Source: Haliotis rufescens | Taxonomy: Eukaryota | Reading direction: 5' to 3' | Assembly (NCBI RefSeq): GCF_023055435.1 | Contig: NW_025964001.1 | Location: 33,666,001 to 33,730,000 of the forward strand | DNA: 64,000 bases | Shown: piece by piece, positions 6,373-53,698 of the stretch | Position numbering within the stretch: the stretch's first letter is position 1 | How the letters are laid out: each line of letters opens with the position of its first letter | Made by a program: the position numbers and the translations under genes | Notes under the pieces: model-generated | The model's database searches: none | Seen by the model: only the letters and a program-made list of their open reading frames with translations | What the model was told of the DNA's origin: nothing

Positions 6373-9300
6373 ATGAAGATGAAGGTGGGTGTATCATTGT
6401 TAATTATTTCTAACAGTTAATTGCATTGTGCATTGTACACAATTATGAAAATAACAAGTGCTTTCAATCATTCGTATCCCTTATGTCAAACTACATGGAG
6501 TGCACCCCTAAATGATGCATGAAATATATAATCTGTATGCACTTGTGGATAGCGTTTGGAATGGCAAAAATAACCTTTAACTTTTTGTTTTGCATAAGGG
6601 ACTATGTGCAACAATCTGATGTCAATTTCCATTGTAGACCTTTACATTGCAAGATGTGTCATGCTTGAAACTGGGTTTCTAATTGTTCCCTTTTAGTAAA
6701 CAGTTTATAAACATTATACGCCCCGGTTATGTTTCTAGGTTTGATACCTGCATACCCGTTCTCATGGGTTTCACCGAAGTGGTAGACGTCTGAGACCTTC
6801 ATCACTGTCTTTCCTCCCACATTGAGCTGACACACCGTGAGATAACTGGAAAACTGTTCAAAACGGCGTTAAACCAACCCAACTCACTCACTCATGTCGA
6901 CCATGCAAGCATGTAAATACAAATCCATCTTGACACATTTATATATTTTACAACTCTGAACTGTCAATGTGTGCATGTTTGTATACAGTTACTGGTGTTG
7001 TTAAGTTGTGTGGTGTTGGCCGCCACTGGGCTGCGGGTGTCGACCCTGACCTCCCACAAGCAGCAGAAACTGAAGAAGACCACGATGACCGTCCTGAAGA
7101 TGCCCCAACCTCAAGAGAAGGTTGACCTTGACCTTTGCCCGACATGCGTCAGCTTCACGGAGGAAACCATTGATATCATGATGGATATCCTTCTCAGTAA
7201 GTCTATCAAATGTGTATATAGTCACCTAATCTAGCTTATAGAAATTCCCCGACCGCCTCTGTTGGCTAGAGGATAGGGCGTCCGCCCGGAGGACGGAAGG
7301 TCGGGGGTTCGATCCCCGCCGTGTCATACCAAAAATCACATTCACGGTCAATTTCTTATTTGCCCTGATGTATAGTATTGTAATAGCCAAGATTACATAT
7401 CCCTGTGCATGCATTCAAAGGAAAAATAACTACACCCGTGTTTGTACACTTGGCTTTCAACGGAGTGATAACTGCCCGTGTCGCTTTGGGCTTCCCTTCC
7501 ATTTAACTGATACGACGTGAAATAACTGACTGATATGAGGCGTTAAATCCAACTGACTTACCCACAACGTGTTATTTCCACGTTTGTGTTCAGAAGTGAT
7601 ACATCTGCAATCTAAACCCAAGACCCGAAGAAGCACATTATTGGTCGTTACGCAGACAGATTTTTACATTTTACAATTGATATTTGTGAGAAGGACATCT
7701 AACAAATGACTTTAGTCTCTTTCAGTCCGTATATTAACCCTGCTAAATATCGGGTTTCTTCCCTTCATGCTGCAGATATTGGTATTCTGGACTCTTGTGG
7801 CGTTCTCTGCTCTATCGTTGAGCAAAAGACAGGAAGCCAGGCTATAGGCGCCGTGTGTAACATCCTGTGTGACGTCGTCGGCATAGACGACTTCGTCAAG
7901 TTCATCACAAAGTTAGTATACTACTAAGAAACATATGATATATTTACGTCAAAATGGAACCTCGTGAATGACATACTCTTTCTTATATCACATCTAAGAT
8001 GTGAGCATTCGAGTTTCTGGTAAGCACGGTAAATCGTTTCATCAGATAACTATTATGCCTATACTGTTACACTTTTCTATCAATATACATCAATCACGCT
8101 GAACAGATGAGTTCATTCCAAGAAGTATTTAGACTGATGGATGATAATGATCAAAATATTCAGAACCATAAATTCAATTGTCATTAAGGCTTGCTTGCAT
8201 CTGACATATTTGTATCCCTCAACAGGGCTGACTTAGATCCCATTTACTTCTGCGAATTGACGAAAATGTGTCCAATCTTCGACCAGGGAGATGCGACCTT
8301 GACAGAGCTTAACATCCTTCCACTGAAAGGACCCCCAGGTACTTCTGTCCCTCTTCGCCCATGTCCATTTCGTCCATTATACAGGAACAGACGTTTGGCG
8401 TAGGATTTGTTGTGCTCATCTAGATATCTAAATTCAACATCCAGTGATGCCATGGATTTCGTCAGACATGTTGTCGGTCATTTTGGATATCAAAATGGCC
8501 GCGATTCGTCACTATTGAATTACAACGACAACGTTTTTCATCATTGTCCTTCGAAATAAAGTGAAATGTATAACACCTAAGTGTCAATATTATAGGTAAC
8601 AATCATGCGTTTTTAATCGGGACATTTTACTAACTGTTTTATGAACAGGTGATCGCACTATAAGCTTCACGTACAATTCAACGAACGGCACCGGCACAGG
8701 CCAAATCAACATCAACATCACGACTGTGGATAAGTTCCCTGTGTGTGAGTATCCCTGGTCCATCTGAGCCCGGGTTAGTTGCATACATTCATACACAGCA
8801 AACCTTCAGAAAATGCTATCAATGCTAATTGACCAGTGCAATTTTCTAATCATGATGAAGACCAATTTTAATTTGTTCACCAGTTAAATGTGAGCATTAT
8901 GTGATAGGAAAGCAGAAAGGGACGCAGTTCTGACAAACCAAGAAATATACTGAGGGTAAATCTTGGATTCGAACCCACTATCATCTAGTCCTGATACGGT
9001 TTAGGGATGCAACTGTGCTACCCTCTACCTCCCTTAAAAACTGCAGATACAGAGCGGTACTGGACCAGTGTACCTTTCGACAAAGCGACCTAGGGCAACG
9101 ACGACAGTGAGTCTTATGTTGAAGCATGGGAGATACGACAGTCGTAGTGGAAAGATCGCTTTGTGGATCGGAGCCCAGAAGTATATGCTTTTTGGGGCGT
9201 GTAATTTATATTGTCAGGTATAAATGTAGGTTGTTGTTTTTCAAAAAGGGATAGATCCATGCCCTCTTGGTCCCATTTTGAATCCGCATATAACATAAAC

Positions 9301-10246
9301 TTCCCGACAATGGTTATCGAACGTATTTCATATAATGACGTTTTCTTTACTATTATAATACTGTTATTATCACATCTGTGTATGTAGCGAGCAGTTTGCT
9401 GATACAGAAGCAACCACCGGGGTTCTACCCCACGGCCTTGAAGCTTTCGGCGGAGAAGTCCCCCGACTGCCACCCCCAGCAACAGAAGTGTGAGACCTGG
9501 AAACACGGCAACTATACACTCACAGTGTGTAAGTATACACAGTAGAAGGAAGGCTGGCAGACCTAACGTAACGCGTGACCTTACTACGCCACATTGGAAT
9601 GCCCGTTTTGCTTGCCCTAAAGAGCGACTATGTTGTCGTAAGAGGCGACTAACGGGATCGGGTGGTCAGGCTCGCTGACTTGCTTGATGCATGTCATCGT
9701 ATCCCAATTGCGTGGATCGATGCTCATGATGTCAATCACCGGTTTGTATGGTCAGACTCGATTATTTACCGACCGCACTCAAAACGGTGGAATATTGCAG
9801 AGTGCGGCGTTAAACAACAAACAAAACAAAAACACAATTAATTAATCTTGCAAAACGAGGATACAAAACCCAGGCGACGTTAAAACTGATAATGTAAGCC
9901 TTCTTTTGACATCAAGCAGCGCTAGGGGTGAGCCGTCAATGGCTACCTTTAATCGGTGGTTCACTGGGGATATGCAATCAGTGTTGAATGTATGTACGAG
10001 GATGCTTAATAAAGACAACAGAGTGTATTTTTTTGTTAAAACCTATTTACAAATTGCATTGATATAAAAGTAAATACTTTGTTTAGAATCTCTTAACTTT
10101 AAATTATCTTGATGCAGTAAAGCATTTCTTCTGTTGCAGCTGTGTGTAATGGCGAATGTTTCAGTGAGCATCCCCACAGCAAGGTGTATGACCGGAAAAG
10201 CATGAACTTCACCATTACAAAGGAGACAATGGGCAGTCAGCACTGA
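6373..10246 (+). CDS. Countin-like secreted saposin-domain protein, copy 1 (270 aa)
   Basis: Exons 6373-6384, 6989-7196, 7776-7911, 8226-8338, 8649-8744, 9388-9528, 10140-10246 (813 nt, all GT-AG, frame intact). MKMKLLVLLSCVVLAATG...DLCPTCVSF...SCGVLC...VCNILCDVVGIDDFVK...ADLDPIYFCELTKMC...NGTGTGQI...VCNGECFSEHPHSKVYD. Motifs match my recollection of Dictyostelium countin (DPIYICE, GTGQL, VCEGSCGSPHP). AATAAA at 10526. Confidence 0.92.
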
Positions 10247-11989
10247 CAATACACAATATTTACAGTAGTCATAACGTCAAAATGTTTTTTTTTAAAAGAA
10301 ATATAGGTGAATACAAATGTGTTTATATTGTTTCTATCTTGGAAACAAAATACTAGCAAATAAATAATTTTCGAGCAATTACAATTTGAAAATGTCTCCG
10401 AAATACACGGTGATGACTTGAAAAGCAATATTTGTAAACTTAGTATTAACAGAATATCAAACGACGTCCAGATACGACGACAGTTCTTAACAGTCACACA
10501 TTGTAACCAACAGATCCAAATTTATAATAAACTATTTCTTTCTGTGTGTATTTTATTTTGTCCGTTTGTGACGGCAATGTTGTAAGCTGGGTTCCGTCTC
10601 TTCATGTCACAAGTTGACGACACGCAGATAAATCCTAGAACCAGCTTATCAATGCTGTCGTAGAGATCTGTCTATGACGTCACATTCTTCGTATAGACGT
10701 GTCTATGACGTCACAGCATTGTCTTTACAGACAGGAAGGAAAAAAGACGTATTTCAGCCCACATAGACTCGGTCACTTTTCAACACTTTCTACATTACTT
10801 TGGTGCGTTCGGAGACTATACATTTAAACCTCTGCTTGTTTCTTCATTGAAGGTATGACTAACAATGCTCGTGTTAATTTACCAACAATAGATGGCCACT
10901 GGTAAAACTTTTCTTTGACCGTGAAATGACGAAAATATTTAAATACTTTCGGTTTTCTAACCAAGCAATTTTATTTTTCGTGTATGTTATAACAAACAAA
11001 CAAAACAACAACCAAAAAACAGGCCATGTACCAGAATATCAAATAATGTGTTTCCTGCAATGGTAATTTAACCAATAAGAACTTCTTCCCCCCCCCCCCC
11101 CCCCCCCCCCCATGTAAATCTGGTATTAGACAAGGAGCTGTCGCCTTTCCTGTTTGCAATATTTTAAAATAATCTCGAAGGGGCATATGATTCGTGTACA
11201 GATGTCCAATTGAAACCAGATGAATTCTATGATCGAATCGAAAATATTATCACAATATTTGTATTATTGCATGAATATGATGCAGTGTCATGAGCCAAAA
11301 TGCTCATGATCTACAGCAGCCGTTTGACTCATTTCATTGCTATTGTACACATGGGAGATTTAAGTTAATAACTATGTTCTATGTTTTATGCCGAGGACGG
11401 ACATTAAATTTATCACTAAAATGTGAGTTGCGGTTTTCTGAAAGTATGAGTACATATAACAGATCTTCTCTATGGATGCGAAGTATGAAGATTTGACAAC
11501 ATCTTCGCTATGGCACATAGGGAACATGGAAGATTCCATCTATCAACCATAGTTAAAACGAGAATATGTTTGGGGGCAAAATATTCTCAGGGAAATGTAT
11601 CTAAATTATCTTTCCTTTTATATAAGTGATTGTTTAATGACGACCTATGTGAAAAGTGTAAACATACAAAGATTACATATACACCTACAAATTAATTAGG
11701 CACCTCCCTGTTTTTGTGTGTTTTTTAAAATAAGGTATCATTCACGTCAAGCCTGAGCTATGGTGGAGTAGTCAATGTCTAGTGTAAGACGAGACTATTG
11801 ACTACTGAAAACACAGAGAATGATGCAAATGTTCAATATTTTCATTGCCTTAATAACACAGTTGCGATAGTAATGTAATTGTGCAAAATTGATAATCACG
11901 AAAACTATGAATCTGGGAAGTTCCATGATCAGGTATGAACGACCATTACTGTCCAAAAGCGTTCATTGTTATCTGACAAACATAATCAG

Positions 11990-13010: not shown

Positions 13011-13143
13011 ATGCTTCACTTTCATATGTCTTTGTGTTTGGGCGACGCAGTCAGTTATTGTCATGACTATACTCGAGATCGACAGCTATTCTATGAATGA
13101 GTATCACGAAACTTGAATTTCTAAAGACGGGTATAACACTGTA

Positions 13144-18994: not shown

Positions 18995-19034
<40 letters not shown>

Positions 19035-19036
19035 TG
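18995..19036. repeat. (GCGT)n microsatellite
   Basis: About 10 units, seen directly. Confidence 0.95.
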
Positions 19037-20765: not shown

Positions 20766-23334
20766 CAAGTTAACATGAAATGCAACAAGATATGAATGAA
20801 CATACGACAACGATATCACTGTGCATTAAGGCATATGAGCAATAAAAGATGAAAAGCTACCAATGAATAAAAGCGTATGGCTTCTTTAAAAAATTGGTGG
20901 TCTTATTTACAAGAAATAAGATTAACAGGTTAATACTTAAGTTAACAATAAACAATAACCCAATAGAACATTGAAAGACAGCTTAGGGATAAAAGTATAT
21001 GGCTTGTATATGGCTTGTAGTAAGAGGCGACTTTAAAGGGTGATCGGACGGTCAGGCTCTGTGATTGGCTGGATGTTTCTTAGTGGTCAGATGGCGTTGG
21101 TCTTAGCTCATTTTACTTGTTTGGTTTAACAGACTGCTTTGATAAAGTTATGTAGCCACTGATTCATAGGATTAACACTATCTGTAGCAGAATAAAAACG
21201 TTATTCACCAAAGCTGGAGTCACTCCAGCGTAAGGTACACCACTCAAGCGAAAAGAGTGCAAGTTATACATTGTACTTTCTAACAGAAACTGCTTGAGCT
21301 TTACAGTGAGTGAGTGAGTTGGGTTTAACGCCGCTTTTAACATTAGTCCAGTTATATCACGGCGTGTCAGCTGTGGGAGGAAAGCCTGAAGTGATGCAGG
21401 TCTCAGACGTTTACTACTTCGGTGAAACCCACGAGCACGGGTATGGTGCTGACAAACCTAGAAACATAATTGAGGTGAACCCCGAGCTTGACAGAGCTTT
21501 ACAGAATTTTGAATATATTGGCTGGTGCTTTTGACATCGCTTTGATAAATGCAAAAACCGTCGTTTTTATCTACAGTCACAGGTACCGTATATAACCCGG
21601 TTTGATTTGTTTAGGTGTAGTATGTTACAATCCACAGAATGACTCATGTTTAGAAAAAAGAGAACCACTCAATGTTGAAAGAATACGCGAGACTGTCAAG
21701 ACACGCTTGTCCTGTGCATTATTGCGAACATGATTGAGTTACATCCTGGCGCGTTGTTACTGATAGGTTGTTGCAATGATAGTTTCATTCCGTTCTTATA
21801 GGCGGTAAATACTCAAACATCAGCTTTATACCCTAAACTATCATTTGTAAATGGACATGCCGTTAACCATGAAGTGGACTAATGCTGGTTGGTCATTAAC
21901 AGTGTTGGTGAGTGTATATACATGTTAGGTTTGTGGCGAAAGATAAAGGAGATTATCTTTTAAGGGCACATGAACTTTGAGTACACTGAGAAATGGAGAT
22001 GGTATGGAGACGCATATGTGACAAATCACAATACGGATTATCTGGAAATTATTGTCATGAGCTAATCCCATTAATGCAAACGTGAGTTCTAAATGATTTT
22101 AATTATCCTAAATAGAAACGATTCAGCAAGATTCACTATACGGTATACCGTCCTGAATTAGATTGGATTTCATTATGAATCCGCCGACTTAAATTTTCAC
22201 AAATGTGGAATAAAATATTCAGAACAGTATATTTTGTAATCTCCCCTTTCAGTTTTTAACCAGGTTTCAGCATAGTAATAAAACAGAGACGATCCATATA
22301 TCAGAAGGAAAATACATCTTTGACATTCTGCTTGATAGTTTAGATTTCAATGCATGAAATAAAACGTAATAAACTTAGCCCCTAGGGCGCAGCAATTCAC
22401 CCAGCACAAGTACAGCAATAGTTTAGGCCTTCAAATGGGCATTGTAATACCCTGGTATGGGATCCCCACATACACGGCGGAACTAGTATGTCCACATCGT
22501 CTTCAATAGTGTTGTTATACACCGGCCTGCAGATAGTCGAGTCTGAATCAGACAAACCCGTGGTGCGTATTAAGAGCATCGTCCCACGCCGCCGGGATAA
22601 CGATGTCAAGCAATCAGCCAAGTAACCGAGCCAAGCCATCATGTCCATTTATTCGCAGTCAGCTTCCTAGAGCTTCTGCAAAGGTCTCCGGGGTTTGATC
22701 TCGTGAGAAGATCTTTCATAATTTTATTTTACTTCAAGTTAAAGAAAGAAAACCCATATATTTTGACGCCTTGAAAAAATGTGATCCCCTTTATGATAAG
22801 AAACAGTAAGAACAAGTTTCAGCGCAAACAATCCATCGAGCGGTTATGGAGATCATATTGCCTTTAGAACATCATCTTCAGCGGTGAAAGAGTCGTGCTG
22901 ATAATGATGCATGCACTGAAAACAATTGAACCATCTTATGATCATTATTATTTGCGCATTATGTTAGGGTGGTTATGAAAGAAGCTTATTAAGGGCTTCT
23001 GACATGAACCTTCTTGTCGGCCGTTTTTAAGAATATAGCAAAACTTGACTCTGACGACTTTGAAGAAAGGTGAGACCCTGTTTGTCAGGAACTCTCATAA
23101 AAAATACCAAGGCGAAAATGTGAATGTTCCGCAAGGTGAAAAACAACGAGAGTTGACAAACATGTACGTGTTAAAAGACCGGAATTGACACATGACAAAA
23201 CGATAGAAGGATAAAACACCAAGGCAGGGGAGATGCAGTCTGTGTATACATATATCAGTTTGGTTGGATTTTCAGATGGGGAAATCATTGTAAATTTCCA
23301 TTCATTAGATCGGGATAGTTATGTCCCAACAAGA

Positions 23335-23416
23335 CTTCCATACATCAGGCTTTATAAAGGAATAACTCTGCAAAGCGTCTCTTCCTTGCTGTGGATCTGG
23401 CGGGGATATACGTACA
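23335..23416 (+). promoter_or_regulatory. TATA-containing core promoter/5' UTR of countin-like copy 2
   Basis: CTTCCATACATCAGGCTTTATAAAGGAA with TATAAA at 23353-23358, conserved at the same position upstream of copies 3 and 4. Confidence 0.75.
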
Positions 23417-33225: not shown

Positions 33226-33262
33226 TACCACTACCACCACCACCACCACCACCACCACCACC
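33226..33262. repeat. (CAC)n microsatellite
   Basis: About 12 units, seen directly just after the LINE relic. Confidence 0.9.
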
Positions 33263-34020: not shown

Positions 34021-35050
34021 CCTATTGGGAAAGAAAGCACACAAGTACAACAGGTTGTTGGTTTACGTCGCAGTCAGCAATACTCCAGCTACATTACGGT
34101 GGCGTGTAAATAGTCAACAGGACAAGAAGACAAGTCAGAGACTCTGATCATCCAATACAGTCGACCTTTACGACCAGCAATGAGGTGTTGAGTACCTATG
34201 AAACGGGTGGTGAGGCTCGGTGACCTGGTTGATTGCGTGTCATCGTACCCAAATGTCATCGAGCGTTGCTCATATCAGTCACCGGTTTATCGGGGACAGA
34301 CTCTATTATGTACATGCCACCGGCACATATCTGGAATATTGCTGAGTGTGGCGTTTAATAACAAACATCGATCTACAAATATGAAGCTTCTGGCTTCCGG
34401 GTTTTATAAAAGAATTTTTTGGCAACGAAGCCTTGTACAGAAAAGGGGTTTTCGCCATTGAGTTGTATGTCCGTTACATTATGACAGCTCATATTTAATG
34501 ACAGCTCAAAGTGATACAGCTTATAAATTCAGAATTAAAAACATAGTTCACATCCATATTGAATCTTTGAAGTAAGCCGCTGACTTCTGAGTATCATTCA
34601 AAGGTCCTAACATGCAAGTGAGAACGTGCTGTCTCACGGTAATTTTTCCTTAAAATAGAATGGAAGAATTGAGAATAAATGATGACATCAGAGTTGCTAG
34701 CGTTCCAAGATTTATTCAGGTGCAGTGTGTTTAATAAACATTTCAATTCAATTAATCACATAATCATATCTAATAATCATAAATTATATCATTACAAATA
34801 ATTGTCATAACGTCGTGGTTTCTTATGACATACTCAGAATATAAAACAATAAGCATTTCGCTTCAATCTTATAACATATCAAATAATCATCATTACATTA
34901 TATACAAGACGTTTTCTCATGGTATGGGTATGGTGCTGACAACCAAGAAACCTTATCAGAGGGAAGAACTAACTGCAAAATGAAATCGTTATTTACGTAA
35001 CTTCTGTGAATTTCCACTCAGGAGAACCAGATATAAAAGTCCCTACCGGG

Positions 35051-35134
35051 CTTCCATACACCAAGCTTTATAAAGGAACATCTTTGCAATGCACCTCTTC
35101 CTTGTTCTAGGCCCGGCTGGGGATATTACTTGCA
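35051..35134 (+). promoter_or_regulatory. TATA-containing core promoter/5' UTR of countin-like copy 3
   Basis: CTTCCATACACCAAGCTTTATAAAGGAA with TATAAA at 35069-35074, homologous to copies 2 and 4. Confidence 0.75.
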
Positions 35135-38100: not shown

Positions 38101-40665
38101 GCGAATCTGTTGGTCTAGTTGAATTTGCTGAATACTTTAAGAAGTGAGTTAAACCAAATAACCCTGTAAAAGGTAGGTCGTTAAAGAAAAGAGTAAAGGT
38201 ACATTCGTCAAATGACAATACAGTGTTGGTGTCTATCTACATGTGTTTCTTCAAAATGCATGTTTTCGTTCCATAAATTTCCAACATAAAACAATATTAA
38301 CATTGAAATTCTTGAATCAGCCACTAAACATTAAGACATTCGATCCCTTCAAAAACAATACGCTCTTATTTCCTCTACCTCTCTTTGGTATTCCGAATAA
38401 GAATATAAGTCTCCCGGGTAGCCTATGCTGTTCGTACGAGGCAACTTAATGGATCGGATGGTCGGGTGTTGTGAATTAGTTGATTGAGTGGCAACGTAAC
38501 TCGGCGGCGTGGGACGATGCTCAAACTACTAATCATGGTTTGTCTGGACCAGACTCGATTGTTTACAAGCCAGCGACATTTACCTGGAATATTCGGCTTT
38601 AACAAATTCACAAACAAACTGTGAAACTTGTTTTACAGGCATATAATTAATGCTACACGTGCTTGAACCATCTCCTGTGTTCGTTGTAGGAATACTCTAA
38701 AGCTATGATTATTTTTTACTCTGCAGGGCGGACGCAAACCCTTTCTACTTTTGTGAGCTTATGACCTTATGCCCTGGATTTGACAACGGTGACGCTGAAA
38801 TCACAGAGCTGTCAGTGGACCCACCAGTAGGGCCTCAGGGTATGTCCGCCATTTGTCAGAGCCAAATTCGGTTCGTCCACTGAAAGCACTGACTTCCTGT
38901 CTTCTGTAGAGAAAGCTTTGTCTACATGTAGTGCATCAGTGTTTAAAACTTATTAGTAGACACGCCTTTCAGTATAACTATCCAAGAATATAAGCCTAAA
39001 CATTTTGTGATTGAGAAGGTAAACTGGCTTTAAAATTAGGTGAATCAACACACCTAATGAACACAACGTCCCTTAACTTACTCAAACTAATGTTTCATGT
39101 TGACATCATACTTGGTTTGATTAAGGGAATGCATATATAGGTACTTTAGTTTAGTTCAAAATGTTCTAATTGGCAGTCACCAATGCCCTGTTGTTGTCGA
39201 TGGGTCCAAGTGCTGGAAATCGTTTTCTGTCAAGTAAGCTGTGGGAGCCGATAAGTCTGTAAATTACATTGACATATGAGTAGATGGGTCTGACGTGATA
39301 AAAAAAACATTCATAAAACCATTTAGAACCGAGAAGGCCAAACTTATTCAGTTACGAATGAATACAGTTGATAATCAATGCAGATGCCATCGCCAATACT
39401 TGGGGGGTTTGTATACACCATGATTGAGGACGCAGTGTATGCAGACCCCCAAAGGAGTGCCGATGTGCTGCCTGAAAGTGAAGATTACTCCGCTTTGTTC
39501 GGTGCCCTATCCTGGCAGGTTTGTTGAAGGTAAAACCAGTCGTACCGATATAGTTTACCCTCTTGTTACAGGCACGAGAACAATAAGCTATTCTTACACC
39601 TCCAAGAAGGGAACAGGAACCGGAGAAGCTGTTCTGCTTGTTGAGACAATTGATGGATATCACATTGGTAAGTCCTCAAAGATCACGTATTGACATATAC
39701 TTTTATAAGCGTTATCTATTCTTAAAAAACAGAACATGCAGTTCGTGAATAACTGAAATACTGTTCAAATCTCACCAGATATCTTCCTTCACAGACGATA
39801 GTGTCCTCATCCAGAAGTCTCCGCCAGGCACCTACCCCAACAGCGTCACCCTCACGACTATCCCCCGCCCCCACTGTAACCCTAACAAGGAAGCCTGTGA
39901 AAAGTGGGTTCCTGGAAACTACACACTATTTGTGGGTGAGTGTCTCGGCTACCATAACTCTCATACATGTACATTATATGCCGTTAGCTGTTGCATGACC
40001 TTAGCCATAATTGCTCATGGAAGTCTTCTGCTCGATTCGGTTCGATTCCCTATTCGATAACTCTCATATATGCACCTGACATGGGGTTAGCTGTTGTTTG
40101 ACCTTAGTGTAACTGGTGTTTTTAGTATAGAGTCAGGCAGGCCATCTGTTCACAAACTACAAGGGGTCGGTTATGTAACCTAGTATAGTCACACTCGTCA
40201 CACAGAAGGCCCGATTTCGATTATCCACATGGGTACAATGTGTGAAGCCCATTTCTGGTTTCCAATCCCGTGATATTGATGGAATATTGCTAAAAGCGGC
40301 GTAATATCCTATTCACTCACTCATTTGTTGTCATTTTCGGCGGCGTAAAACATACTAACACAAACAAAAAGTGTGACTTGATATTTATATATATAGTCTG
40401 ATTTTATATATAGTCGATTCTGTGACAGTAATGTCATTTAACATCATGCCATTTTCATCTTTGAGACGTGGACGGCGTTGACACCAGTATTATAAACATC
40501 TCGCCACTGCGTGACTAACGTTGTTAAGGATGTTTTGTCTAAGACTCGATTTATCAGCTTCATCATCATACCATTCCAGGTATCTGCAATGGCAGGTGTG
40601 GAAGCAACTTCCCACACAGCAAGATCTACGACATGCGAAACACCACGTTCGTCATCACTGCCTAG
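35135..40665 (+). CDS. Countin-like secreted saposin-domain protein, copy 3 (250 aa)
   Basis: Exons 35135-35146, 37032-37212, 38020-38143, 38727-38839, 39572-39667, 39795-39935, 40580-40665. Frame intact and all 12 family Cys kept. AATAAA at about 40832. Confidence 0.92.
35990..36620 (+). mobile_element. Highly decayed mariner relic in intron 1 of countin-like copy 3
   Basis: MEK..RDVIRYLHK start and QGIIMTDHLQRGNTIN, similar to mariner GIIMIDYLEKGKTIN. Boundaries approximate. Confidence 0.6.
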
Positions 40666-43265: not shown

Positions 43266-45144
43266 TTAATTAAAAGACATTCAAAAGACAAAATAAACTT
43301 TCAAAGCCTCGTTTTATAATTGCTCAATATGGACATTATTTAATTCCCTTTTCCCTGATAAATTAGTTTATATTTAAGTTTTAAATGTTATATACTCTTT
43401 CGGGAGACACAAATATCGCAGTAGTGACTGAGCAGGTGAGCTACGAAACGAGGGTTCGGTTTGCTGCAATAGGCATAAATATGATAAAGGCATACATCAG
43501 GTCAGTTACTATAGACTTCATGTAATTGTTACTGTAAAGACCCGCAGATAAAAATGATAGAAGGACAGAAAGACAAGTCGACATGTAGTCACAGGAACAC
43601 CTAAACATATTAACACATTTAGAAGACGACACCATTATGAGTTAATACAACTTCATATAAATGTCTAACTAATGGATTAAACTAGTTAAACAAATAATTA
43701 TATGGATCACGAGACAAATGGTCAGGGGGATATACATGCGGAGGCATAGACGGATGTTGGTTTGCTTTAATGTCCATTCAGGGGAACAATACTGTATTAG
43801 TATGTTATAAGATACCAACGCGATAAGTGGCAAAGAACAATGAAGAAACGCAGCGTGGTTTATTTCACGATAAAACATTGTTCTATCATGACGTCATTTT
43901 AGATTCAAATATGCGCTCGCAACTCGATGACGTCATAAATTGAACGACGTTTTTTTTCAGAGGGAATTGTTTTGTGAGTTGTGGACCAATAGATGAAGCT
44001 GGGCAACGTAGATAAAACAATGGCCGAACGATCGCTTCCAAAAGTGGGATTATATGACAATCGGTATTGTGAGAAATAGAGAATCTCACCCGAGTATCTT
44101 TTGATATCAAATATATCAAAACGAGTTGATAAAAGTGGAAAAAAAGTGTTGATATATTTGATATCAAAAGACACGAGGGTGAGATTTTATTTATCATCCA
44201 ACATCATTCTTCAAACTTTTTCAATTTGTAGACAGTAATTAGCAGTGACTTCAGTGTAAAAATTACTGCTAACAGCTTCAGTAGCAGAGCCATTAGTGAT
44301 GTCATTTGATTGTGACGTCATGGTAACCCGTGACGTCACAATGGTCTGCAAAGCATTGTGATTTAATTTCATTGCAGCGATATCTACAGTTTATTACTTG
44401 CCCGTGAAGAGATCACCCGTTTAATAAACATACAGCTGTATTACACATTGTGTAATACCAAAACGCGTGCTTATGTACTCTCGGAACACGTTTCACGAAC
44501 AAATACCAGAACTATTCACTCGTTTCATAAAATTGGTATTACACGGGAGCTTGTTTAGTATTCTATATGTAGATATCGCTTGATCTAATCCAAGCGATAT
44601 CTCCTGTGGGAGCCAGTTTTGGATGATAAAAGGTAGAGATCATCGACGTGAAAATTATGAAAATATGCGGGAAAGACCCATTTTAACCCCTGCTCATAAA
44701 ATGGACTTGTCCGACATTGTCGCGGTCGGATTATATTTAATACGGGTAAATATTTTTAAAGCGAGTAATTTTTACTAAGATCCTTAAAGAGACTTATGTA
44801 ATGTTGATATCTCATATAAGAAAACAAATTACTCGTGGTCGTTGTTTGTCGTACAATAAAACACTGCCGGGAGAATAAACCACGAGGGGTGAAGTGTTTT
44901 ACTGTACGATAAACAACTTCCACTCGTCGTTTATTCCTTAAATAAAACAGTTGCAATTCTATATTTTGCTTTGTACAATGTGTTCCCGCTTTTGTTCCGG
45001 TGGTCACTGGACTTGCCTTTGCATGTGTTTATGACGGATGCCACCGATAACGCAGGATACACTCACCTCCGCCCCTCGTGGTTTATTCTCCCTGCAGTGT
45101 TTTATTATGCATCGTTTATGTGTTAAATAAATGTCCCTACTGGG

Positions 45145-45226
45145 CTTCCGTACATCAGGCTTTATAAAGGAACATCTTTGGCACGTGCCTGTTCCTTGCT
45201 GTAGATCTGGCTGGGGTATACGTACA
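45145..45226 (+). promoter_or_regulatory. TATA-containing core promoter/5' UTR of countin-like copy 4
   Basis: CTTCCGTACATCAGGCTTTATAAAGGAA with TATAAA at 45163-45168, homologous to copies 2 and 3. Confidence 0.75.
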
Positions 45227-48200
45227 ATGAACATCAAGGTAATTCACACTAACGATATTTTGTTATAAATAATAATAAATTATACGCGGTGATAGTTACT
45301 CAGACACAAAAGAAAAGGGGTTTAGAATATAAGAATAATTTTTAAAAATAGGTTACAAGATTACCTGCATTTAAAAACAAATATAAACTCTAGACGAAAT
45401 GCATATTATTCAACACAATAGATTAATTTCAATCAAATGTGCTCATTCTCCCTTCTCGACTCTAGAGTCCGATAATTAGTTCAAGATAAAGAATATATTC
45501 ATTGTGATAGTGCTCTATGTCGTCCTGATTCCGCTGTGTGATTTGACAGATGTCTGCGATGACTTGTGTCTCATAGGGGACTTCAGCGTCATTCTGTCGA
45601 CTTGGGACATCTCAGACTACGGCTTAGTTAATAATATGGCTCTGAAACACTTCATACTGACGGGGTGAAAAATGAATAGTCTTGTCAAGTGGAGAAGACG
45701 TTTCTGAATGTCACTGGCTATTTATGTCTAATAAAGATAATGCCAGTTCTGTAGCTTAATGGTATAATTATATGAATTCATGGGTAAAGTTTAGGGTAGA
45801 GGGCGTTTCCAGATACATTTTCCTATTTTGCCTTGTACAATGTGTTCCCGTGTTTGTTCCGGTGGGCACTTGACTTGCCTTTACATGTATTTATGACGGA
45901 TGTCACCCATGATGCAGGATACGCTCACTATTTCGCGATCTCTTGGCATCGTCACTTTTTTATAGGGATTCATAAACACATACTTATGATGTTGTCAGAA
46001 TCGTGCAAGGGATTCTTAGATATTGCTTATGATTATGTTTGGGTTTTTTCTTTTACGCCGCACTCAGCAGTAACCCAGCTATAAGACGGTGGTCCGTAAG
46101 TAATCCAGTCTGGACCAGACAATTCAGTGATTAATATCATGAGCATCGATCCACAAAATTGGAATCGATGACATTCATTAACCAAATCAGCGAGCCTGAC
46201 CACCCGATCCCTTTAGTCGCCGCTTACGACAAGCATAGTCGCCTTTTACAGCAAGCATCGGTTGCCGAAGACCTATTCTACCCAAGATCTTCACGGGTCT
46301 ACAGCAAAACGAAATGGTGTAATCGTTTAAAGTGTTCTCAAAGTGAACATAAATACATAAAATACATAAAAACGTCAACGCCAAAGAATGATCAGTCTTG
46401 ATTATCTGCCGAAAGAGATTACTTTGGGCGAGAATTGGTGAAAATAATAGGAATAGATCACTGAAAACCAGTGATGAAAATCCGTTCATGTGACTGAATA
46501 TTTGTTTTACATCTGTCAGACTCGTGCTTCCTTATTACCCGATGTCTTGAGATTCTGTAAGGGGTTCTTACCATGTTGTAGGGTGTCACAGTATTTTTGG
46601 CGGCCCTGACGGGGGTCCAGTGTCTGCCAGCCTTCGCCGAATCCGGAGATCAGCTCACGGGAACAGCCGTCAAGTGCAAGACGTGCGTCCAGTTCACTAG
46701 AAAAGCTGGTGCCGACCTTCTCAACGTCATTCTCAGTAAGGGCGTCTAGGTACAGTTATACTTGTTTCAAAGTTCACATCTGTGGACCTATAATGTCTCT
46801 CACATGAAGATTGAAGAATCTTGAGGATAAAATAATCATGGTTAAGTTTAGGATTCATACATGCAACTTGTTTGTTGCAGACTCTGGGGTCGTTGGTTCC
46901 TGTACGGAACTGTGTGCAGCTCTGAGTGACAAGAGTCAGGCGGCCATGTGTGGACGCCTCTGTAACTTTGCCGGTATCAACGCGTTTATTCAGCTCTTTG
47001 TGAAGTGAGTGAAACCAAGCTACACAGTCTGAGTGTGTGGGTGAACAGAAAAGTGTGGTTGTATGACGGAATCATTACACAACGGAGCTGAGTACGATGT
47101 GTGCTAAATCAGGTTTACAACTGATACATCATCAGGACACCGTCTCTCCTCCCTCACCGGCCTTCCATGGAAAAACACAACTTTCTTATTTTTAAAACAA
47201 AACACGAATGTTTAATTTCTAATGTAAGGGGTTAATAGTTTTTTGTGAAGGGATATTTCTAGTCACAGAATTAAAGCTACATTTCTAAACCCTTCCATAG
47301 CCCGTTGTAAAATGACCCGGTCCGAGACGGCGACCTCAGTGCTTCCAACCCTGTTTGTCTTGGAATCGCCATTTGTTAGCACTGCGTGGTAGGATAGATT
47401 TCTGTATACTGAGTTCTATCTCGGATAGATTTATGCACTACACCCGACGACAAATTTGCCCCTTCAGCCTTCAGTGGTAGCAATGACGAAGATTTCACTC
47501 GCTTGGAAGGAATTTGAACGGTTAACGGTCAAAGGGAGACAACTCAATCATCGGTTTCATGCTCTTATTTCAGACTTAGGTAGTTAGCTAAGTGTACCCT
47601 GAGTGGATACGGATGTGGTTTCACTGACGATTTCAGTTTTATTCGGGTTTACACGGTTTATTACGTAACCTGCATCGATAAGACTCATTGGATTTCCGGA
47701 GCCGTGATGTTGGTGGTCAAGGGGAAGAAACTTTAATTCTGTTTACCGTTTGCTAAACAAACTTACCTCCCTTTGAGACAAGGGACATGACTCTTGATTT
47801 GTTCCACGCGATTATCTCCCTTTAATTGAGGGCACACGCCATATGTGAAGTTTTAAGTGAGACACTGTGCAGAGTTAAAGACAAGGGAGTTAACTCTTGT
47901 ACAAACACGATTACCTCCCTTTGACCATAAACAAAACCACTACCACTTCGTCATTTGAAATGGGGGGTTTTCAATACCAAATCCATTTTTTGTAATAAAA
48001 AGATTAGCATAAAGGGAGAAGAATATTCAAATATGCACGCTGAGTTATACTTCACGTAACTGAACCAGTTTAGTGGCAACGGTGATATCGAAGATTAACG
48101 AAAGTGTCACTTGCTGGGATTGGCCTTGTTATGCAAGGTCAAAAAGGGATAATTAACGGTTTCATGCACTAATCTCAGTGTTTTGTAATTTGAGAATACA

Positions 48201-51200
48201 TGATTGATTGACGGTCACGGGTGTGGTTTCATGGGCCGCGCACGGACAATTTCGTTTTTATTCGAGTTTACTCGGTTTATTCCGTTACCTGCCTACTACA
48301 TCGATAAGAATCATTGGCGTTGTGGAGCCTTATGTTGGTGGTCAAAGGGAGGTCACTTTTAATCCTTTGCTAAACAAACTTACCTCCCTTTGAAACAAAG
48401 GGGCATAACTCTTGAGATGTTCTAGCCGATTAGTTCCCTTTGGTTGAGGGCACACGCCGTGTGTGAAGTTTTAAGCGAGACACTGTGCGGAGTGAAAGAC
48501 AAGGGAGTTAACTCTTGTACAAACACGATTACCTCCCTTTGACCATAAACAACCACTACCGACTACCCCTTGGTTATTTGCAATGGGGTTTTCCATACCA
48601 AATCCAATTTTGTTACACAAAGATTCGCATAAAGGAAGAGATAATCATACACGCACGCTGAGTTCTAAATCACGTAACTGAACCAGTTTAGTGGCAACGA
48701 TTATATTCGAAGAGTAACGAAAGTGTCACTCGCTGGGAAGGGGCTTGTTATGTCAAAGGTCGAAGGGAGACAACTCAGTCAACGTTTTCATGCACTAATC
48801 TGTGTTTTGTAATTTAGGAGAATACATGATTGATTGACGGTCACGAGTGTGGTTTCATGGGCCGCACACGGAGGATTTCAGCTTCATTCGGGTTCACTAG
48901 GTTTATTTCTTTACCTGCCTGCTACATCGATAAGAATCACTGGATTTGTGGAGCTGTGATGGTGGTGGTGAAAGGGAAGTAATCCGGTTTACCGTTTGCT
49001 AAACAAACTTACCTCCCTTTGAAACAAGGGACATAAATTTTGAGATGTCCTGCACGATTAGCTCCCTTTGATGGAGGGCACACATTTTAAAGTGAAACAC
49101 TGTGTTGACCTAAAGGCAAGGGAGTAAACTCTTGTACAAACACGATTACCTCCCTTTGACCATAAAAACCACTACCAACTATCATGTGGTCCTTTGCGAT
49201 GTGGGGACATAGGTAGCTGAGTCATGTATGGTGCCTCAATTCGCTGCGTCCCTTTTCGCTTGTCAGAAATATCTGATTGTGGGTTTGAATCCTGGTTCAC
49301 CTCGATTATGTTTCTGGATTTGTCAGCGCAATTGCTGTGCCCTTGGGTTTCACCAAAGTGGTAAACATCTGAGACATGCATCACTTCAGGCTTTCCTCCT
49401 ACATTAGGCTGATACACCATGATATAACTGGAATTCTGTTCAAGGCGGTGTTAAACCCAACATGCTCACTCCTTTGGGATGTCTATTTTTTCCATTTCCA
49501 CGACAGAAAAGCTATTTCTAAACATGCAGAAAGGACATACCTCATACAACTGTAATTTAACTGTGTATTTAATGGCTCATTAAATCTCATATACATCACT
49601 GTTGAAGATTATTTTCAAAAAAATGTGTTTTCTGCATTAAAGTTTGATATTAGATTGAATAACTTGAGACTCAAGCCGTATGTTTCAGCATTGTCATGTC
49701 AGCGACCTTACTGTCACAACGGTCCTAAGCCTGTATAAAAGCATGTTAGTTTGATTGTCTCAGACTAAGATCCTTTTGAATGACAGGGACTGAAACAGAA
49801 ACTCTTATTTCTTCTGCAGGGCTAACTTAGATTCATTCTACTTCTGTGAACTGCTCACCATGTGCCAAATCTTTGACCGTGGTGATGCCCAAATCCGAAA
49901 GCTCTCCGTCACCCCATCCATTGGACCTCAAGGTATGTACGCCATTTGTCAGGGATACATTAGTCTCTGGAGGGACCAACTCATGTGTATTACTTTTCAG
50001 TTGGAGTCAAAAATACCTATAGGAGATAAACCTTCCGTATATGATCTTGGTTGATTGATTAAATGCTAATGTATGTTGTGATTGGTAACTGCGCTGGCAT
50101 CAGTGAATGTCCAGAACTTGTTTAAGAAATAAGGTTTGCTCTACCCCCATGTGTAGTGTAATAAAGTATAGTTTTGCCCTGAACTTTTGTAGTTAAATCT
50201 CGAGGATGCTTGTTCTATAAATGATAACCTTCCAAAGGTTTGTGTACTTACCACCAAAAGAAATGAATACCCTACATGTTGGTTAATATATGAAGACTTA
50301 CTCATATTCAAGAGATATTAGATTGGTTCGATGCACAAACTAACATACTGGTATTTCGTGTGAACTGATGCTCATTCATGGATCCATGACTCGAGATGCA
50401 CCATGTGTCTTGTTCAGGATTAGGCTGTAAAGTTTGTCGTGTTACCACAGAGTGTCTTTATTCTTATCACGATATGCTGCACGTGATATTGACTGATTGT
50501 TGGGTTTGTCATTAATTGGTACACATTGGAAACATCTCTTCTTAGCATACATACTTTTCTATATGTTTATAGTTCATGTTTCTTTAGGCTGTGAGTATAT
50601 ATATTGAAAGAAGTGCTTCGTCACAAGTTTGTCCTGACCAAAAGTAGTAACATGTCATCAGTTGCCTACATAAACGTCCATATTTAAATATGGAATTATT
50701 GAATTTTGTTTGTTTGTTGTTTAACGCCGCACTCAGCAATATTCTAGCTATATGACGGCTGTCTGTAGATAATCAAGTCTGCACCAGACAATCCAGCAAT
50801 TGACATCCACGCAATTAGGATACGATGACATGCATCAACCAAGTCAGCGAGCCTGACCACCCCTATTATTTAAAGATATCTTAGAATACATCTGACCACT
50901 TATACTTCGTTTGATTGTAAATGGATTTCCGTCATTGGAGACAACATTTGGCTTTTCTGTAGATTATTGGATTAAGCTGAAAGGTTTTGTAGCTGTTGTT
51001 GACAGGGATCATATATTTCTTAAAAATCACCTAAACAAAGCAGGACCTTGAATGAAAATGAACATGCACAAGCAGCCTCTGTTTTGCACAAAACATAATG
51101 CTCAGCATTGGAGATGATGTCCTTAGACAAAATAATTGAAATCAAAGAAACTGAATTGTCTGAAACTTAGCAGTTTGGTTATGTGTAGAATCAACTGTCA

Positions 51201-53698
51201 TGCTTTGCCTTAAGGCTGTTTTTTTATCTCCTGGTTTCGGATCTGGTTCCTTGAAGGAGGCTAAATAGGGTTAAGTTACATAGACCAGTCAAAATCAAGT
51301 CCTCCCAAAAGCAGTTTTTGTTTGATTATTCATGAATACTGATTTGTTTCTTCAATATGGTTCAGGCAAGAGAACAGTTAGCTACTCCTACACCTCCGAC
51401 AACGGGACCGGAGCTGGAGAAGTAGCTGTTGTTGTTCAGCCACCCAGTGGACTTCCCATTGGTAAGTCACCATGAATCAACTGTCCTCGGAAAATGTCAG
51501 GACACATGGACAATACATTGCATAGTGTCTGCACATTTAATCATAACAGAGATGTGAGTCAGTTTGGTTTTATGCCTAATTTAGCAGTACTAGGGCTGGT
51601 CAAAAAGTTCTAAGCCTAACAAACATAACAAACAATTGTGGAAGTGTTTTTCATTTCATTTTTCAACATAACCTCCCTGCTTTTCAATACACTTCTCATA
51701 TTGATAGTCAAGCTTTTCAATTACAGTCAGGAAGAAGTTTTCTGAAGCCACCCTTAAAAACCCATTTACGGCAGCTTTGAGGTCATTGTGGGGTTTTTCA
51801 GTTAAGGAAACAGGTGGAAATCACTTGGTGCCAGGTCTGGTGAGTATGGAGGGTGAGGAAGCTCTTCAAACTCACATTGTCGCACAGCAGCCTTTGCAAG
51901 TCGACAGGTGTGAGAAGGGGCATTGTCACGAAGTAGTAGAATTCCAGCAGTCAGCATTCCTCACTGGTTTTCTTTTATAGAATCTCTCGGGCGATAGTAG
52001 GCATGGTAATTGTCTTTTGACTTTCTCAGTAATCAACAAGCATCACACCCTTTGCATCCCCAAATACAGTGGCCACAACTTTCTTCACTGATCTTGAAGA
52101 CGTGAATTTCTTTGGTGTCAGCATGGTCAGAGAAGTGGAATGGTGCCATTCCATGGATTGACGTTTTGACTCGGGATCATAATGGTAGACCCATTATTCA
52201 TTTCCCGTTACTAATCTCTTTTTCTTTTTGAATTTGACGGAATCCTCCTTAATAAGCTCTAACTTTTCTCTGGCAATGTTACTTCTTTTTTCCTTAAAAT
52301 CAGAATTTAGAAACTTTGGCACCCATCAAGCAGACATCTTATTCATCTGTAAATGTTCATGAATAATAATGTCAATGATCCATGGCTTAGACCTGGGGTG
52401 TTCCTGAAGTTCAGCAATGGTAATACATCTATCTGACAGTAAACAACTTTTTATCTCCTTCATCTTAATCTTCATTGATGGAAGTTGACGGACGTTCAGA
52501 CCTAGGGTCATCATCAAGGCTTGTTCTCCCAGCCTTAAACATAGCTGCCCATCGTTTAACAGAGGTATAGCTAGGGCACTTATCCCAATACACTTGTGAC
52601 ATGCGGTCATAAATTTCTTGGGGAGTACTTTTCTCTAAAGTCAAAAACTTGATGGTTCTCATTCTTTTCCATTTCTGTGTCCATTTAGACCCACATCACA
52701 TTCAACTGGCTGTGACTAATATACAAACGGCCTCAACAGACCAAATACACTTGCCATGAACTACTCAAACAATGTACTACATTGACTAGTTCACTTTATT
52801 ATGGCCCATATTTGAAAGTTAGTCAGGCTTAGAACTTTTTGACCAGCCCTCGTATTCCAGCAATATCATGTGCTGTACACAAGAATTAGGCTTCACCTGT
52901 TGTTTACATGTATTGAACAGAACCTGGCATTTCTATACAACACCTGTTGTTTAAACGACACATGATGTAACTTTACAGGTGACAGTTTCTTCATCCAGAG
53001 GTCACCGCCAGGCACCTACTCCAACAGCTTCATCCTCATGGCCAAGCCTGACCCCCACTGTGACCCCAAGAAGGGACCCTGTCGAAAATGGTCACCTGGA
53101 CACTACAAACTCAGTATTGGTAAGTATTAATGTGGAGATAGAGCCACATATGCATGAAATATGGTCTTACTTGGTGTTTGCTTTTAGATCAAACCATGTG
53201 TTAGTAAAGGAAGAAAAAGCTTGAATACATTAGGTACCACTTGGACTCCAATTGTACATAAACATTATGTAACATAGGATTTCCTTCCATAAACCCTGCC
53301 AAGGTTAGATAATACTTCTGTTCTTAATTTAAAGAGGGACACATCTCAAGGGAGCATTTATTGTCTGTAGCAGGAAATAATTAGTATCAAAATCGACTCA
53401 TTTTCTCTTGGATAATGTTAATGGCTTGACTAATATACATAAAAATATTTAAGTTAGCAAAGTGTTTTTGATGACCCGTCTCACCCTGACTGACTACATC
53501 TTAGCCAGTCTGGTGATGGTCACTCTATAGTTACTATTGTTAGGACTTTGGGGTCTCATTTCTAATTAGTATTTAGTTATCCACCAAACTTATCAAATAC
53601 ATTCTTTCCCAGATGTATGTTACGGCAAGTGCGGCAGCGGCGACCCACACAGCAAGATCTACGACACCCATGATGTCAATTTCATCATCACCTCCTAG
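45227..53698 (+). CDS. Countin-like secreted saposin-domain protein, copy 4 (241 aa)
   Basis: Exons 45227-45238, 46582-46735, 46881-47004, 49820-49932, 51366-51461, 52979-53119, 53613-53698. Frame intact and all 12 family Cys kept. AATAAA at 53721. Confidence 0.92.
47480..49180. repeat. ~618-bp tandem repeat (just under 3 units) in intron 3 of countin-like copy 4
   Basis: Anchor AACTCTTGTACAAACACGATTACCTCCCTTTGACCATAAA recurs near 47891, 48510 and 49127. Internal TTACCTCCCTTT / AAGGGAG..AACTC submotifs occur in both orientations. Confidence 0.9.
51590..52852 (-). mobile_element. Full-length (1263 bp) inactive mariner element in intron 5 of countin-like copy 4
   Basis: TIRs C(T/G)AGGGCTGGTCAAAAAGTTCTAAGCCT with TA target duplication. 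Disrupted transposase MRTIKFL..EIYDRM..VKRWAAMFKAGRTSLDDDPRSERP, WVPKFL and HPPYSPDLAPSDFHLF. Confidence 0.92.

What the first reader, a model, noticed from the sequence alone, without database searches (positions are those of the whole stretch)
6373..53698. Tandem array of four intact countin-like (amoebal counting-factor) genes in an animal genome
Seen: four co-oriented 7-exon genes with identical intron phases, identical lengths for exons 4, 5 and 6 (113/96/141 nt), a 12-nt coding first exon, signal peptides and 12 invariant Cys (CxxC, CxxLC, CxxLC, C-x5-C in the saposin-like part, plus 4 in a beta-rich C-terminal domain). None is visible as a whole in the ORF track. Known: countin is the saposin-like subunit of the secreted Dictyostelium counting factor that limits aggregate size, and canonical saposin B domains have 6 Cys rather than 8. 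Inference: this is a lineage-specific expansion of a poorly studied secreted family. It could be a lipid-binding, digestive or innate-immune effector set, or a cell-density signal (for example in haemocyte aggregation). I know of no functional characterisation in animals.
Basis: partly seen in the sequence, partly recalled or inferred. Interest (0 to 1): 0.88.

Follow-up and report, generated by a model that had tools for sequence, protein, structure and literature searches.

The report
Four countin-like genes in red abalone

Summary
There are four co-oriented 7-exon genes of 270, 261, 250 and 241 aa. All 24 introns are GT-AG with the same phases. Exon 1 is 12 nt, and exons 4, 5 and 6 are 113, 96 and 141 nt. 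Twelve Cys are invariant in the mature protein.

The assembly gap lies in intron 1 of gene B, next to a 51-bp minisatellite, and touches no coding sequence.

Transcript contigs from two studies support all six introns of gene A. The products of A and B are 100% identical to RefSeq "countin-3-like [Haliotis rufescens]". C and D have full-length orthologues in H. rubra and H. asinina. A whole-genome search finds the family only in this window.

The family is widespread: molluscs, amphioxus, brachiopod, bryozoan, rotifers, annelid, sponges, a choanoflagellate and Capsaspora. It has no Pfam model. AlphaFold gives a five-helix saposin-like domain plus a generic Ig-like beta-sandwich.

B is the canonical copy. 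C and D are fast-evolving Haliotis-lineage duplicates that have lost 12 and 13 of 69 family-conserved residues.

I could not align the proteins directly with Dictyostelium countin. The function is inferred, most likely a secreted or lysosomal lipid-binding digestive factor. Verdict: real and intact, but already annotated, so of modest interest.

The parts
6373..10246 (+). Gene A, 270 aa, 7 exons: 6373-6384, 6989-7196, 7776-7911, 8226-8338, 8649-8744, 9388-9528, 10140-10246 (stop included)
   Evidence: Model built. It is 100% identical over 270 aa to P0213 (XP_046339364.1, countin-3-like, H. rufescens). All six introns are bridged by transcript contigs in runs X1, X4 and X7.
10247..10510 (+). 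Gene A 3' untranslated region (approximate end)
   Evidence: Transcript contigs continue from exon 7 to 10507-10514. In X1 the contig ends at 10507 and is followed by sequencing-adapter letters.
23417..30689 (+). Gene B, 261 aa, 7 exons: 23417-23428, 26609-26810, 27856-27991, 28563-28675, 29227-29322, 29940-30080, 30604-30689
   Evidence: Model built. It is 100% identical over 261 aa to P0210 (XP_046338442.2, countin-3-like, H. rufescens). It departs from only 1 of 69 family-conserved columns.
25411..25562 (.). Assembly gap inside intron 1 of gene B
   Evidence: It is non-coding by position. It was not filled.
25563..26396 (.). 51-bp minisatellite (16.4 copies) directly after the gap, in intron 1 of gene B
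   Evidence: The left flank of the gap carries no copy of the unit.
35135..40665 (+). Gene C, 250 aa, 7 exons: 35135-35146, 37032-37212, 38020-38143, 38727-38839, 39572-39667, 39795-39935, 40580-40665
   Evidence: Model built. It is 83% identical over 250 aa to H. rubra XP_046582301.1 and 79% to H. asinina XP_067682825.1. It departs at 12 of 69 conserved columns.
45227..53698 (+). Gene D, 241 aa, 7 exons: 45227-45238, 46582-46735, 46881-47004, 49820-49932, 51366-51461, 52979-53119, 53613-53698
   Evidence: Model built. It is 82% identical to H. rubra XP_046582299.1 and 75% to H. asinina XP_067682702.1. It departs at 13 of 69 conserved columns.
23289..23416 (+). Conserved upstream block of gene B with a TATAAA motif about 60 nt before the ATG
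   Evidence: Self-BLAST and alignment A1.
35005..35134 (+). The same conserved upstream block for gene C
45127..45226 (+). The same conserved upstream block for gene D

Best explanation
Shown: the window, from the red abalone Haliotis rufescens, carries the genome's only locus of the 'countin-like' family. It holds four intact paralogues in the same orientation. Each encodes a signal peptide, a variable linker, a helical saposin-like domain with four disulfide-capable Cys pairs (the usual six Cys plus a second C-x3-C pair), and a seven-strand Ig-like beta-sandwich with four more Cys. Gene B is the conserved orthologue of a protein found from Capsaspora and choanoflagellates to molluscs and amphioxus. 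Gene A is a divergent paralogue. Genes C and D are duplicates that arose from the B type in the Haliotis lineage, before H. asinina, H. rubra and H. rufescens split. They evolve about three times faster than A and B and have lost residues that are otherwise invariant.

Inferred, about 45% likely: the protein is secreted into the digestive lumen or delivered to phagolysosomes. There the saposin-like domain binds or lifts membrane lipids of ingested food or microbes, and the beta-sandwich uses its conserved acidic and His loops (the NGTGTG and HPHS motifs) to hold a partner, a glycan or a metal. On this view it is a digestive or lysosomal lipid-handling factor rather than a cell counter. C and D would then be derived copies with a changed or relaxed ligand site.
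For: Gene structure and integrity. Transcript support for all introns of A. Identity to RefSeq proteins. Sole locus in the 1.33-Gb assembly. Family range and names. Purifying selection among the paralogues (dN/dS 0.23-0.41). Orthologues of all four copies in two other Haliotis species. Tree placing B, C and D in one clade with long C and D stems. Departures from 69 conserved columns (A 5, B 1, C 12, D 13). AlphaFold model with mean pLDDT 86.5 and above 90 in the mature part, showing 5 helices and 7 strands. Saposin likeness: a profile match to the saposin-like part of acyloxyacyl hydrolase (AOAH), 5w78, at E = 0.003 with the Cys aligned; 'Saposin B-type domain-containing protein' names from UniRef; and a sub-threshold match to PF20825. 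Digestive role: a countin-like transcript is among the 30 most expressed genes of the Mytilus digestive gland, at 1.18 times actin (PMC4203926). The named hits come from taxa that I know to digest food inside cells, and none comes from a vertebrate, arthropod or nematode (the reading of this pattern is my inference).
Against: No experiment bears on the function in any animal. The tissue of the runs that express gene A is coded and unknown. Expression of B, C and D was not tested here. The fold matches of the beta-sandwich are generic (Z 8-11 to many unrelated families) and give no function. I could not inspect whether the conserved acidic and His residues cluster in space. Only the best 120 hits of each search were listed, so absence from vertebrates and ecdysozoans is not proven.
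Confidence: 0.8

Rival explanations
1. The proteins act as a secreted cell-density or group-size signal, like the Dictyostelium counting factor. In abalone this could limit haemocyte aggregates.
For: The family shares its name and probably its ancestry with countin, a subunit of the counting factor that sets aggregate size (PMC5890168; PMC11542183). The products are secreted (signal peptides).
Against: The family is kept at about 50% identity in organisms with very different life styles, including rotifers, sponges, bivalves and amphioxus. It is among the most abundant digestive-gland transcripts in a mussel, which suits a bulk effector better than a signal. No other counting-factor subunit was looked for here.
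Confidence: 0.1
2. They are pore-forming antimicrobial saposin-like effectors (amoebapore or NK-lysin type), expanded for immunity.
For: They have a saposin-like domain. C and D evolve fast. A countin-3-like gene varies in copy number between closely related abalone species (PMC9936805). This pattern is common in immune effectors.
Against: Recombinant Dictyostelium countin showed only marginal pore-forming activity (Gao et al. 2002, as reported in PMC5890168). The extra beta domain and the extra disulfide are not features of the small lytic saposin-like proteins. The canonical copy B is very strongly conserved, unlike typical antimicrobial peptides.
Confidence: 0.15
3. 'Countin-like' is a misnomer. 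Only the saposin-like domain is shared with Dictyostelium countin, and the beta-sandwich half belongs to a separate holozoan family.
For: The exon-6 profile (beta domain) found 84 proteins in 1.84 billion, but no hit that could be identified as a Dictyostelium protein. I never obtained the direct alignment with CtnA.
Against: With the whole protein as query, the second-nearest ESM Atlas cluster is a 223-aa 'Saposin B-type domain-containing protein' cluster, commonest in Evosea, with score 0.94. It is again second when only residues 137-261 are the query, with score 0.81, which is a lead only. NCBI and the Capsaspora annotators named these proteins after countin independently. A 46-position profile built from four abalone paralogues has little reach.
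Confidence: 0.15
4. Genes C and D are decaying or silent copies, not functional genes.
For: They have lost 12 and 13 of 69 family-conserved residues, including D121, D182, E222, E239 and H244. Their expression was not tested here.
Against: Both have intact frames, canonical splice sites and all 12 Cys. dN/dS against B and against each other is 0.31-0.41. Full-length orthologues exist in H. rubra and H. asinina. They share a conserved promoter block with B.
Confidence: 0.1

Closest known systems
RefSeq 'countin-3-like' proteins of Haliotis rufescens (XP_046339364.1, XP_046338442.2) and their orthologues in H. cracherodii, H. rubra and H. asinina
   Same: The products of A and B are identical to the two H. 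rufescens entries over their full length. C and D are 75-83% identical to the H. rubra and H. asinina entries.
   Different: Nothing differs for A and B. For C and D I did not recover the H. rufescens entries themselves.
Dictyostelium discoideum countin (CtnA, UniProt Q86IV5 as cited in PMC6831594; also CtnB and CtnC), a subunit of the secreted counting factor
   Same: Both are secreted proteins with a saposin-like domain (PMC5890168, PMC11542183). The abalone family is named after countin by NCBI. A look-alike cluster from Evosea has a similar length.
   Different: No direct alignment was made here. A role in a counting-factor complex is known only for Dictyostelium. The abalone copies form a four-gene array with two fast-evolving members.
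Saposin-like proteins, in particular the saposin-like small subunit of acyloxyacyl hydrolase (AOAH; PDB 5w78, 5w7c)
   Same: This is the only solved structure reached by sequence. The family profile matches at E = 0.003 over about 100 residues with the C-x2-C, central Cys and C-x5-C aligned. The model predicts a five-helix bundle.
   Different: The abalone domain has eight Cys rather than six: the extra pair makes two C-x3-C motifs on neighbouring helices. It is fused to a beta-sandwich rather than a lipase. Pfam saposin models do not reach threshold.
Ig-like or E-set beta-sandwich domains (AlkC Ig-like domain, RbmA, Wzt carbohydrate-binding domain, GH2 and GH3 accessory domains) and the ML domain of NPC2
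   Same: Residues 137-261 superpose at Z 8-11 and rmsd 1.9-2.6 A over about 100 residues. NPC2 is matched by Foldseek at E = 9e-5 with target TM 0.54, and an ML-domain cluster is matched at TM 0.67.
   Different: Sequence identity is only 8-18%, and many unrelated families tie, so there is no specific kinship. The ML domain does not stand out above the rest.

Membership tests
Metazoan/holozoan 'countin-like' family (RefSeq countin-1-like and countin-3-like) | Significant full-length sequence similarity to named members | tested here: met
   A and B are 100% identical to RefSeq members. C and D are 52-54% identical to B-type members over their full length. B is 48% identical to Capsaspora 'countin2' over 252 residues.
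Metazoan/holozoan 'countin-like' family (RefSeq countin-1-like and countin-3-like) | Twelve conserved Cys and the conserved motifs (ADLDPIY, GDA, NGTGTG, CNGECGS-HPHS) | tested here: met
   All 12 Cys are kept in all four copies. Of 69 columns conserved in at least 90% of 60 members, A departs at 5, B at 1, C at 12 and D at 13.
Metazoan/holozoan 'countin-like' family (RefSeq countin-1-like and countin-3-like) | Signal peptide, then a saposin-like helical domain, then a beta-sandwich, about 240-290 aa in all | tested here: met
   Hydrophobic N-termini are read directly from the sequence; no signal-peptide predictor was run. The AlphaFold model of B has helices at 51-128 and strands at 141-259.
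Dictyostelium countin family (CtnA, CtnB, CtnC) | Alignment with D. discoideum countin over both domains | not testable with these tools
   No tool returned the Dictyostelium sequences: only the best 120 hits are listed and a protist query found only itself. The evidence is indirect only: source names and the Evosea look-alike cluster.
Dictyostelium countin family (CtnA, CtnB, CtnC) | Part of a secreted high-molecular-weight counting factor that limits group size | not testable with these tools
   This needs biochemistry and genetics. It is known only for Dictyostelium (PMC5890168).
Saposin-like proteins (saposin B-type domain) | Helical bundle with the six-Cys pattern C-x2-C ... C ... C ... 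C-x5-C | tested here: met
   The pattern is present, with one extra pair. The model predicts five helices. The profile hit to the AOAH saposin-like domain has E = 0.003 with the Cys aligned.
Saposin-like proteins (saposin B-type domain) | Match to Pfam saposin models above the curated cut-off | tested here: not met
   The only match is PF20825 at 13.3 bits against a cut-off of 27, for B alone. Nothing matched for A or for four other members, and nothing matched exon by exon.
ML domain (NPC2, MD-2, Der p 2; PF02221) | A specific sequence or fold match standing above other beta-sandwiches | tested here: not met
   There is no Pfam hit. NPC2 ranks 26th in Foldseek, and many unrelated Ig-like domains score higher in VIA-align.

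The most novel reading that the evidence does not exclude
The family is an ancient, so far unstudied factor of phagolysosomal or digestive lipid handling. It is kept by holozoans that digest food inside cells and was lost in vertebrates. Its ligand or metal site is formed by the two disulfide-stapled loops of the beta-sandwich (E222, E239, H244, H246). In abalone, copies C and D have dismantled that site, evolve fast and vary in copy number between species, which would mark a new function such as immunity or species-specific interactions.
Probability: 0.2. Interest if true: 0.55.

Novelty: already known. Interest (0 to 1): 0.25.

Why it matters
As a gene find it adds little, because the genes are already in RefSeq under the same name. 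Three points give it modest value. The family is very strongly conserved, at about 50% identity between abalone and unicellular relatives of animals. It is secreted and abundant in a mollusc digestive gland. It has no Pfam model and no functional study in any animal. The abalone array offers a natural comparison between one canonical copy, one divergent copy and two fast-evolving copies. That comparison could help find the functional site and test whether the Dictyostelium 'counting' role is ancestral or derived.

Tried and rejected
1. Pfam on single exons by reference gave nothing. Pfam on six full-length members gave only two sub-threshold matches.
2. A search with the protist member P0074, meant to reach amoebozoan countins, found only itself. 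The two other protein searches list only the best 120 hits, all holozoan. So Dictyostelium countin was never obtained.
3. Foldseek and VIA-align against the PDB gave only generic beta-sandwich matches, and the helical domain was barely tested because the sandwich filled the lists. I rejected the ML-domain reading as unspecific.
4. I tried look-up of encoding contigs to get the H. rubra array DNA for synteny and between-species dN/dS.
5. Literature searches for animal countin-like proteins gave only table entries.
6. Hits P0001, P0018, P0071 and P0083 of the exon-6 profile are long proteins with 4-15 short matched stretches, which I set aside as low-complexity matches without reading them.
7. 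Handling of the joined models: the spliced proteins were assembled only inside local scripts from window coordinates. They were never typed into or sent to a database search or a fold. Database work used exon references or database proteins by id. The joined C and D products were therefore not searched or folded.
Full report
**Observation**

A self-comparison of the window showed three to four sets of short paralogous blocks on the + strand. A translated search with the blocks of one copy found a fourth copy near 8-10 kb.

I looked for canonical splice sites that give open frames. Exons of exactly 113, 96 and 141 nt were present in all four copies. The last exon is 86 nt in B, C and D and 107 nt in A. 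Exons 2 and 3 have matching phases in all copies.

Exon 1 is a 12-nt coding exon. In A it is ATGAAGATGAAG followed by GT at 6373-6384. In B, C and D it lies in a conserved block with a TATAAA motif about 60 nt upstream.

The assembled models are A 6373-10246 (270 aa), B 23417-30689 (261 aa), C 35135-40665 (250 aa) and D 45227-53698 (241 aa). All 24 introns are GT..AG. Intron phases are 0,1,2,1,1,1 in each gene. Each product has 13 Cys, of which 12 are invariant in the mature part.

**The gap**

The gap at 25411-25562 lies in intron 1 of gene B, 1,982 nt after exon 1 and 1,046 nt before exon 2. Its left flank is unique sequence. Its right flank is the first unit of a 51-bp minisatellite with 16.4 copies at 92% matches. 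The gap is therefore most likely an unresolved part of that repeat; this is an inference.

Joining exon 1 to exon 2 across this intron gives a protein identical to a RefSeq entry, and the three paralogues make the same join. The coding sequence therefore does not depend on the gap. I did not fill it.

**Transcript support**

I laid contigs of four public runs on 6250-10700. Three small runs from two studies bridge the introns of gene A at exactly the predicted positions:
- 7196/7776
- 7911/8226
- 8338/8649 (reported as 8335/8646, cut +3)
- 8744/9388
- 9528/10140
- in one run, exon 1 to exon 2 (6385/6990, with one ambiguous base)

The large run X15 covers the introns without these joints, as genomic DNA would. 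The transcript runs on to about 10510. The runs are coded, so the tissue is unknown.

**Identity**

Pfam on single exons gave nothing.

A profile of exon 6 from the four copies found 84 proteins among 1.84 billion, including full-length proteins of 259-289 aa. I searched with one of them, P0005. It returned 261 relatives, many of them named countin-1-like or countin-3-like by NCBI or 'Saposin B-type domain-containing protein' by UniRef.

Cluster look-up gave the Haliotis members. A local comparison showed that my model A is 100% identical over 270 aa to XP_046339364.1, and my model B is 100% identical over 261 aa to XP_046338442.2. Both are 'countin-3-like [Haliotis rufescens]'.

From that point I used these database proteins by id. 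The joined C and D products were never sent to a search or a fold.

**Range of the family**

Named hits come from the following groups:
- gastropods, bivalves and a chiton
- Lingula (brachiopod) and Watersipora (bryozoan)
- bdelloid rotifers and Seison
- Owenia (annelid)
- Branchiostoma (amphioxus)
- the sponges Sycon and Oscarella
- the choanoflagellate Mylnosiga
- Pigoraptor and Capsaspora ('countin2')

B is 48-53% identical to the unicellular members. No vertebrate, arthropod or nematode is in the listed hits, but only the best 120 are shown, so their absence is not proven.

A whole-genome six-frame search of the 1.33-Gb assembly with B found 22 exon matches, all inside this window. This is the only locus at that sensitivity.

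**History of the copies**

All four copies have one-to-one orthologues in H. rubra and H. asinina:

| Copy | Identity to H. rubra | Identity to H. asinina |
|---|---|---|
| A | 93% | 88% |
| B | 95% | 90% |
| C | 83% | 79% |
| D | 82% | 75% |

The array therefore predates the split of these species, and C and D change about three times faster than A and B.

In a maximum-likelihood tree, B, C and D form one Haliotis clade with SH-aLRT support of 98. The branches leading to C and D are long. A is a long branch whose position is unresolved (one search was a first look).

Pairwise dN/dS among the paralogues is 0.23-0.41 where dS is not saturated. Of 69 columns conserved in at least 90% of 60 family members, A departs at 5, B at 1, C at 12 and D at 13. 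The departures in C and D include D121, D182, E222, E239 and H244. All Cys are kept in every copy.

A published read-depth study lists a gene whose best hit is H. rufescens 'countin-3-like isoform X1' (XP_046339330.1). It shows about 3 log2 units more mapped reads in one group of eight individuals than in the other, in a comparison of H. discus with H. madaka (PMC9936805). That accession differs from those of A and B. Since this is the only locus in the genome, it is probably C or D; this is an inference.

**Structure**

AlphaFold with a 60-sequence alignment gave mean pLDDT 86.5 and pTM 0.78, with values above 90 across the mature protein. The model shows:
- a signal helix
- a disordered linker
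- five helices at residues 51-128
- seven strands at residues 141-259

The family profile reaches one solved structure by sequence. This is the saposin-like part of acyloxyacyl hydrolase, at E = 0.003 with the Cys motifs aligned. Pfam saposin models stay below threshold.

The two C-x3-C motifs sit on neighbouring helices. I read them as the usual central saposin disulfide plus one extra. This is an inference, because I could not inspect the model coordinates.

The beta domain matches many unrelated Ig-like sandwiches at Z 8-11. Foldseek also finds NPC2, but only at rank 26. It is a generic Ig-like fold, not specifically an ML domain.

**Relation to Dictyostelium countin**

Countin is a secreted protein with a saposin-like domain. 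It is a subunit of the counting factor and has only marginal pore-forming activity (PMC5890168 and PMC11542183). Proteins similar to countin-1 are also reported from Naegleria (PMC6831594).

I could not fetch any Dictyostelium sequence, so the full-length alignment was not run. The indirect evidence is:
- the names given by the sources;
- an ESM Atlas cluster of 223-aa proteins, commonest in Evosea, which is the second-nearest look-alike of the whole protein (score 0.94) and again of the beta domain alone (score 0.81, a lead only).

I put the odds of true two-domain homology at about 85%.

**Function**

Nothing is shown for any animal. The clues are these:
- The protein is secreted.
- It has a lipid-binding type of domain.
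- It is very strongly conserved.
- It is found in taxa that digest food inside cells.
- It ranks among the 30 most expressed genes of the Mytilus digestive gland (PMC4203926).
- It is up-regulated in oyster larvae under acidification (PMC9498863).

My best reading, at about 45%, is a digestive or phagolysosomal lipid-handling factor. Pore-forming defence (about 15%) and a counting-type signal (about 10%) remain open.

**Verdict**

They are already annotated, and the family is widespread. The finding is ordinary as a discovery, with some value as a well-defined, unstudied, conserved secreted family. This scan's own notes held nothing on this family apart from a note on the kinase gene inside the array.

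Noticed in passing
window 15201-16984 (+): A protein-kinase gene lies between countin-like genes A and B. Two open exons match Pfam Pkinase positions 1-87 (E = 5e-16) and 99-254 (E = 3e-29). The array is therefore not strictly uninterrupted.
   Followed up: partly
window 3668-3991 (-): An open frame on the minus strand has a weak DUF4200 match (E = 4e-4, below the cut-off).
   Followed up: partly
window 47486-49204: Intron 3 of gene D holds a tandem duplication of units of about 620 bp (47622-48588 against 48241-49204, 81% identical). This explains why the intron is long.
   Followed up: no
window 9609-9837, 13706-13868, 27148-27395, 46027-46300, 50703-50862, 56494-56749, 59136-59382 and others: A short interspersed repeat of about 160-260 bp has ten or more copies on both strands. 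The copy in intron 6 of gene A, and another repeat at 6697-6845, draw enormous contig depth in all four runs.
   Followed up: no
protein P0042 (259 aa): A full-length countin-like protein that groups with caenogastropod members in the tree is filed in NCBI as 'saposin domain-containing protein, partial [Escherichia coli]' on an 896-bp contig. It is most likely animal contamination in a bacterial record.
   Followed up: partly
protein P0002 (756 aa): This predicted protein has a long, unrelated N-terminal part (not analysed) followed by two partial countin-like units. It is probably a fused gene model over a tandem pair in another species.
   Followed up: no
window 23289-23450, 35005-35168, 45127-45256: Genes B, C and D share a conserved promoter-proximal block with a TATAAA motif. 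Gene A lacks the motif at that position. This suggests B, C and D are regulated in common and A differently.
   Followed up: no
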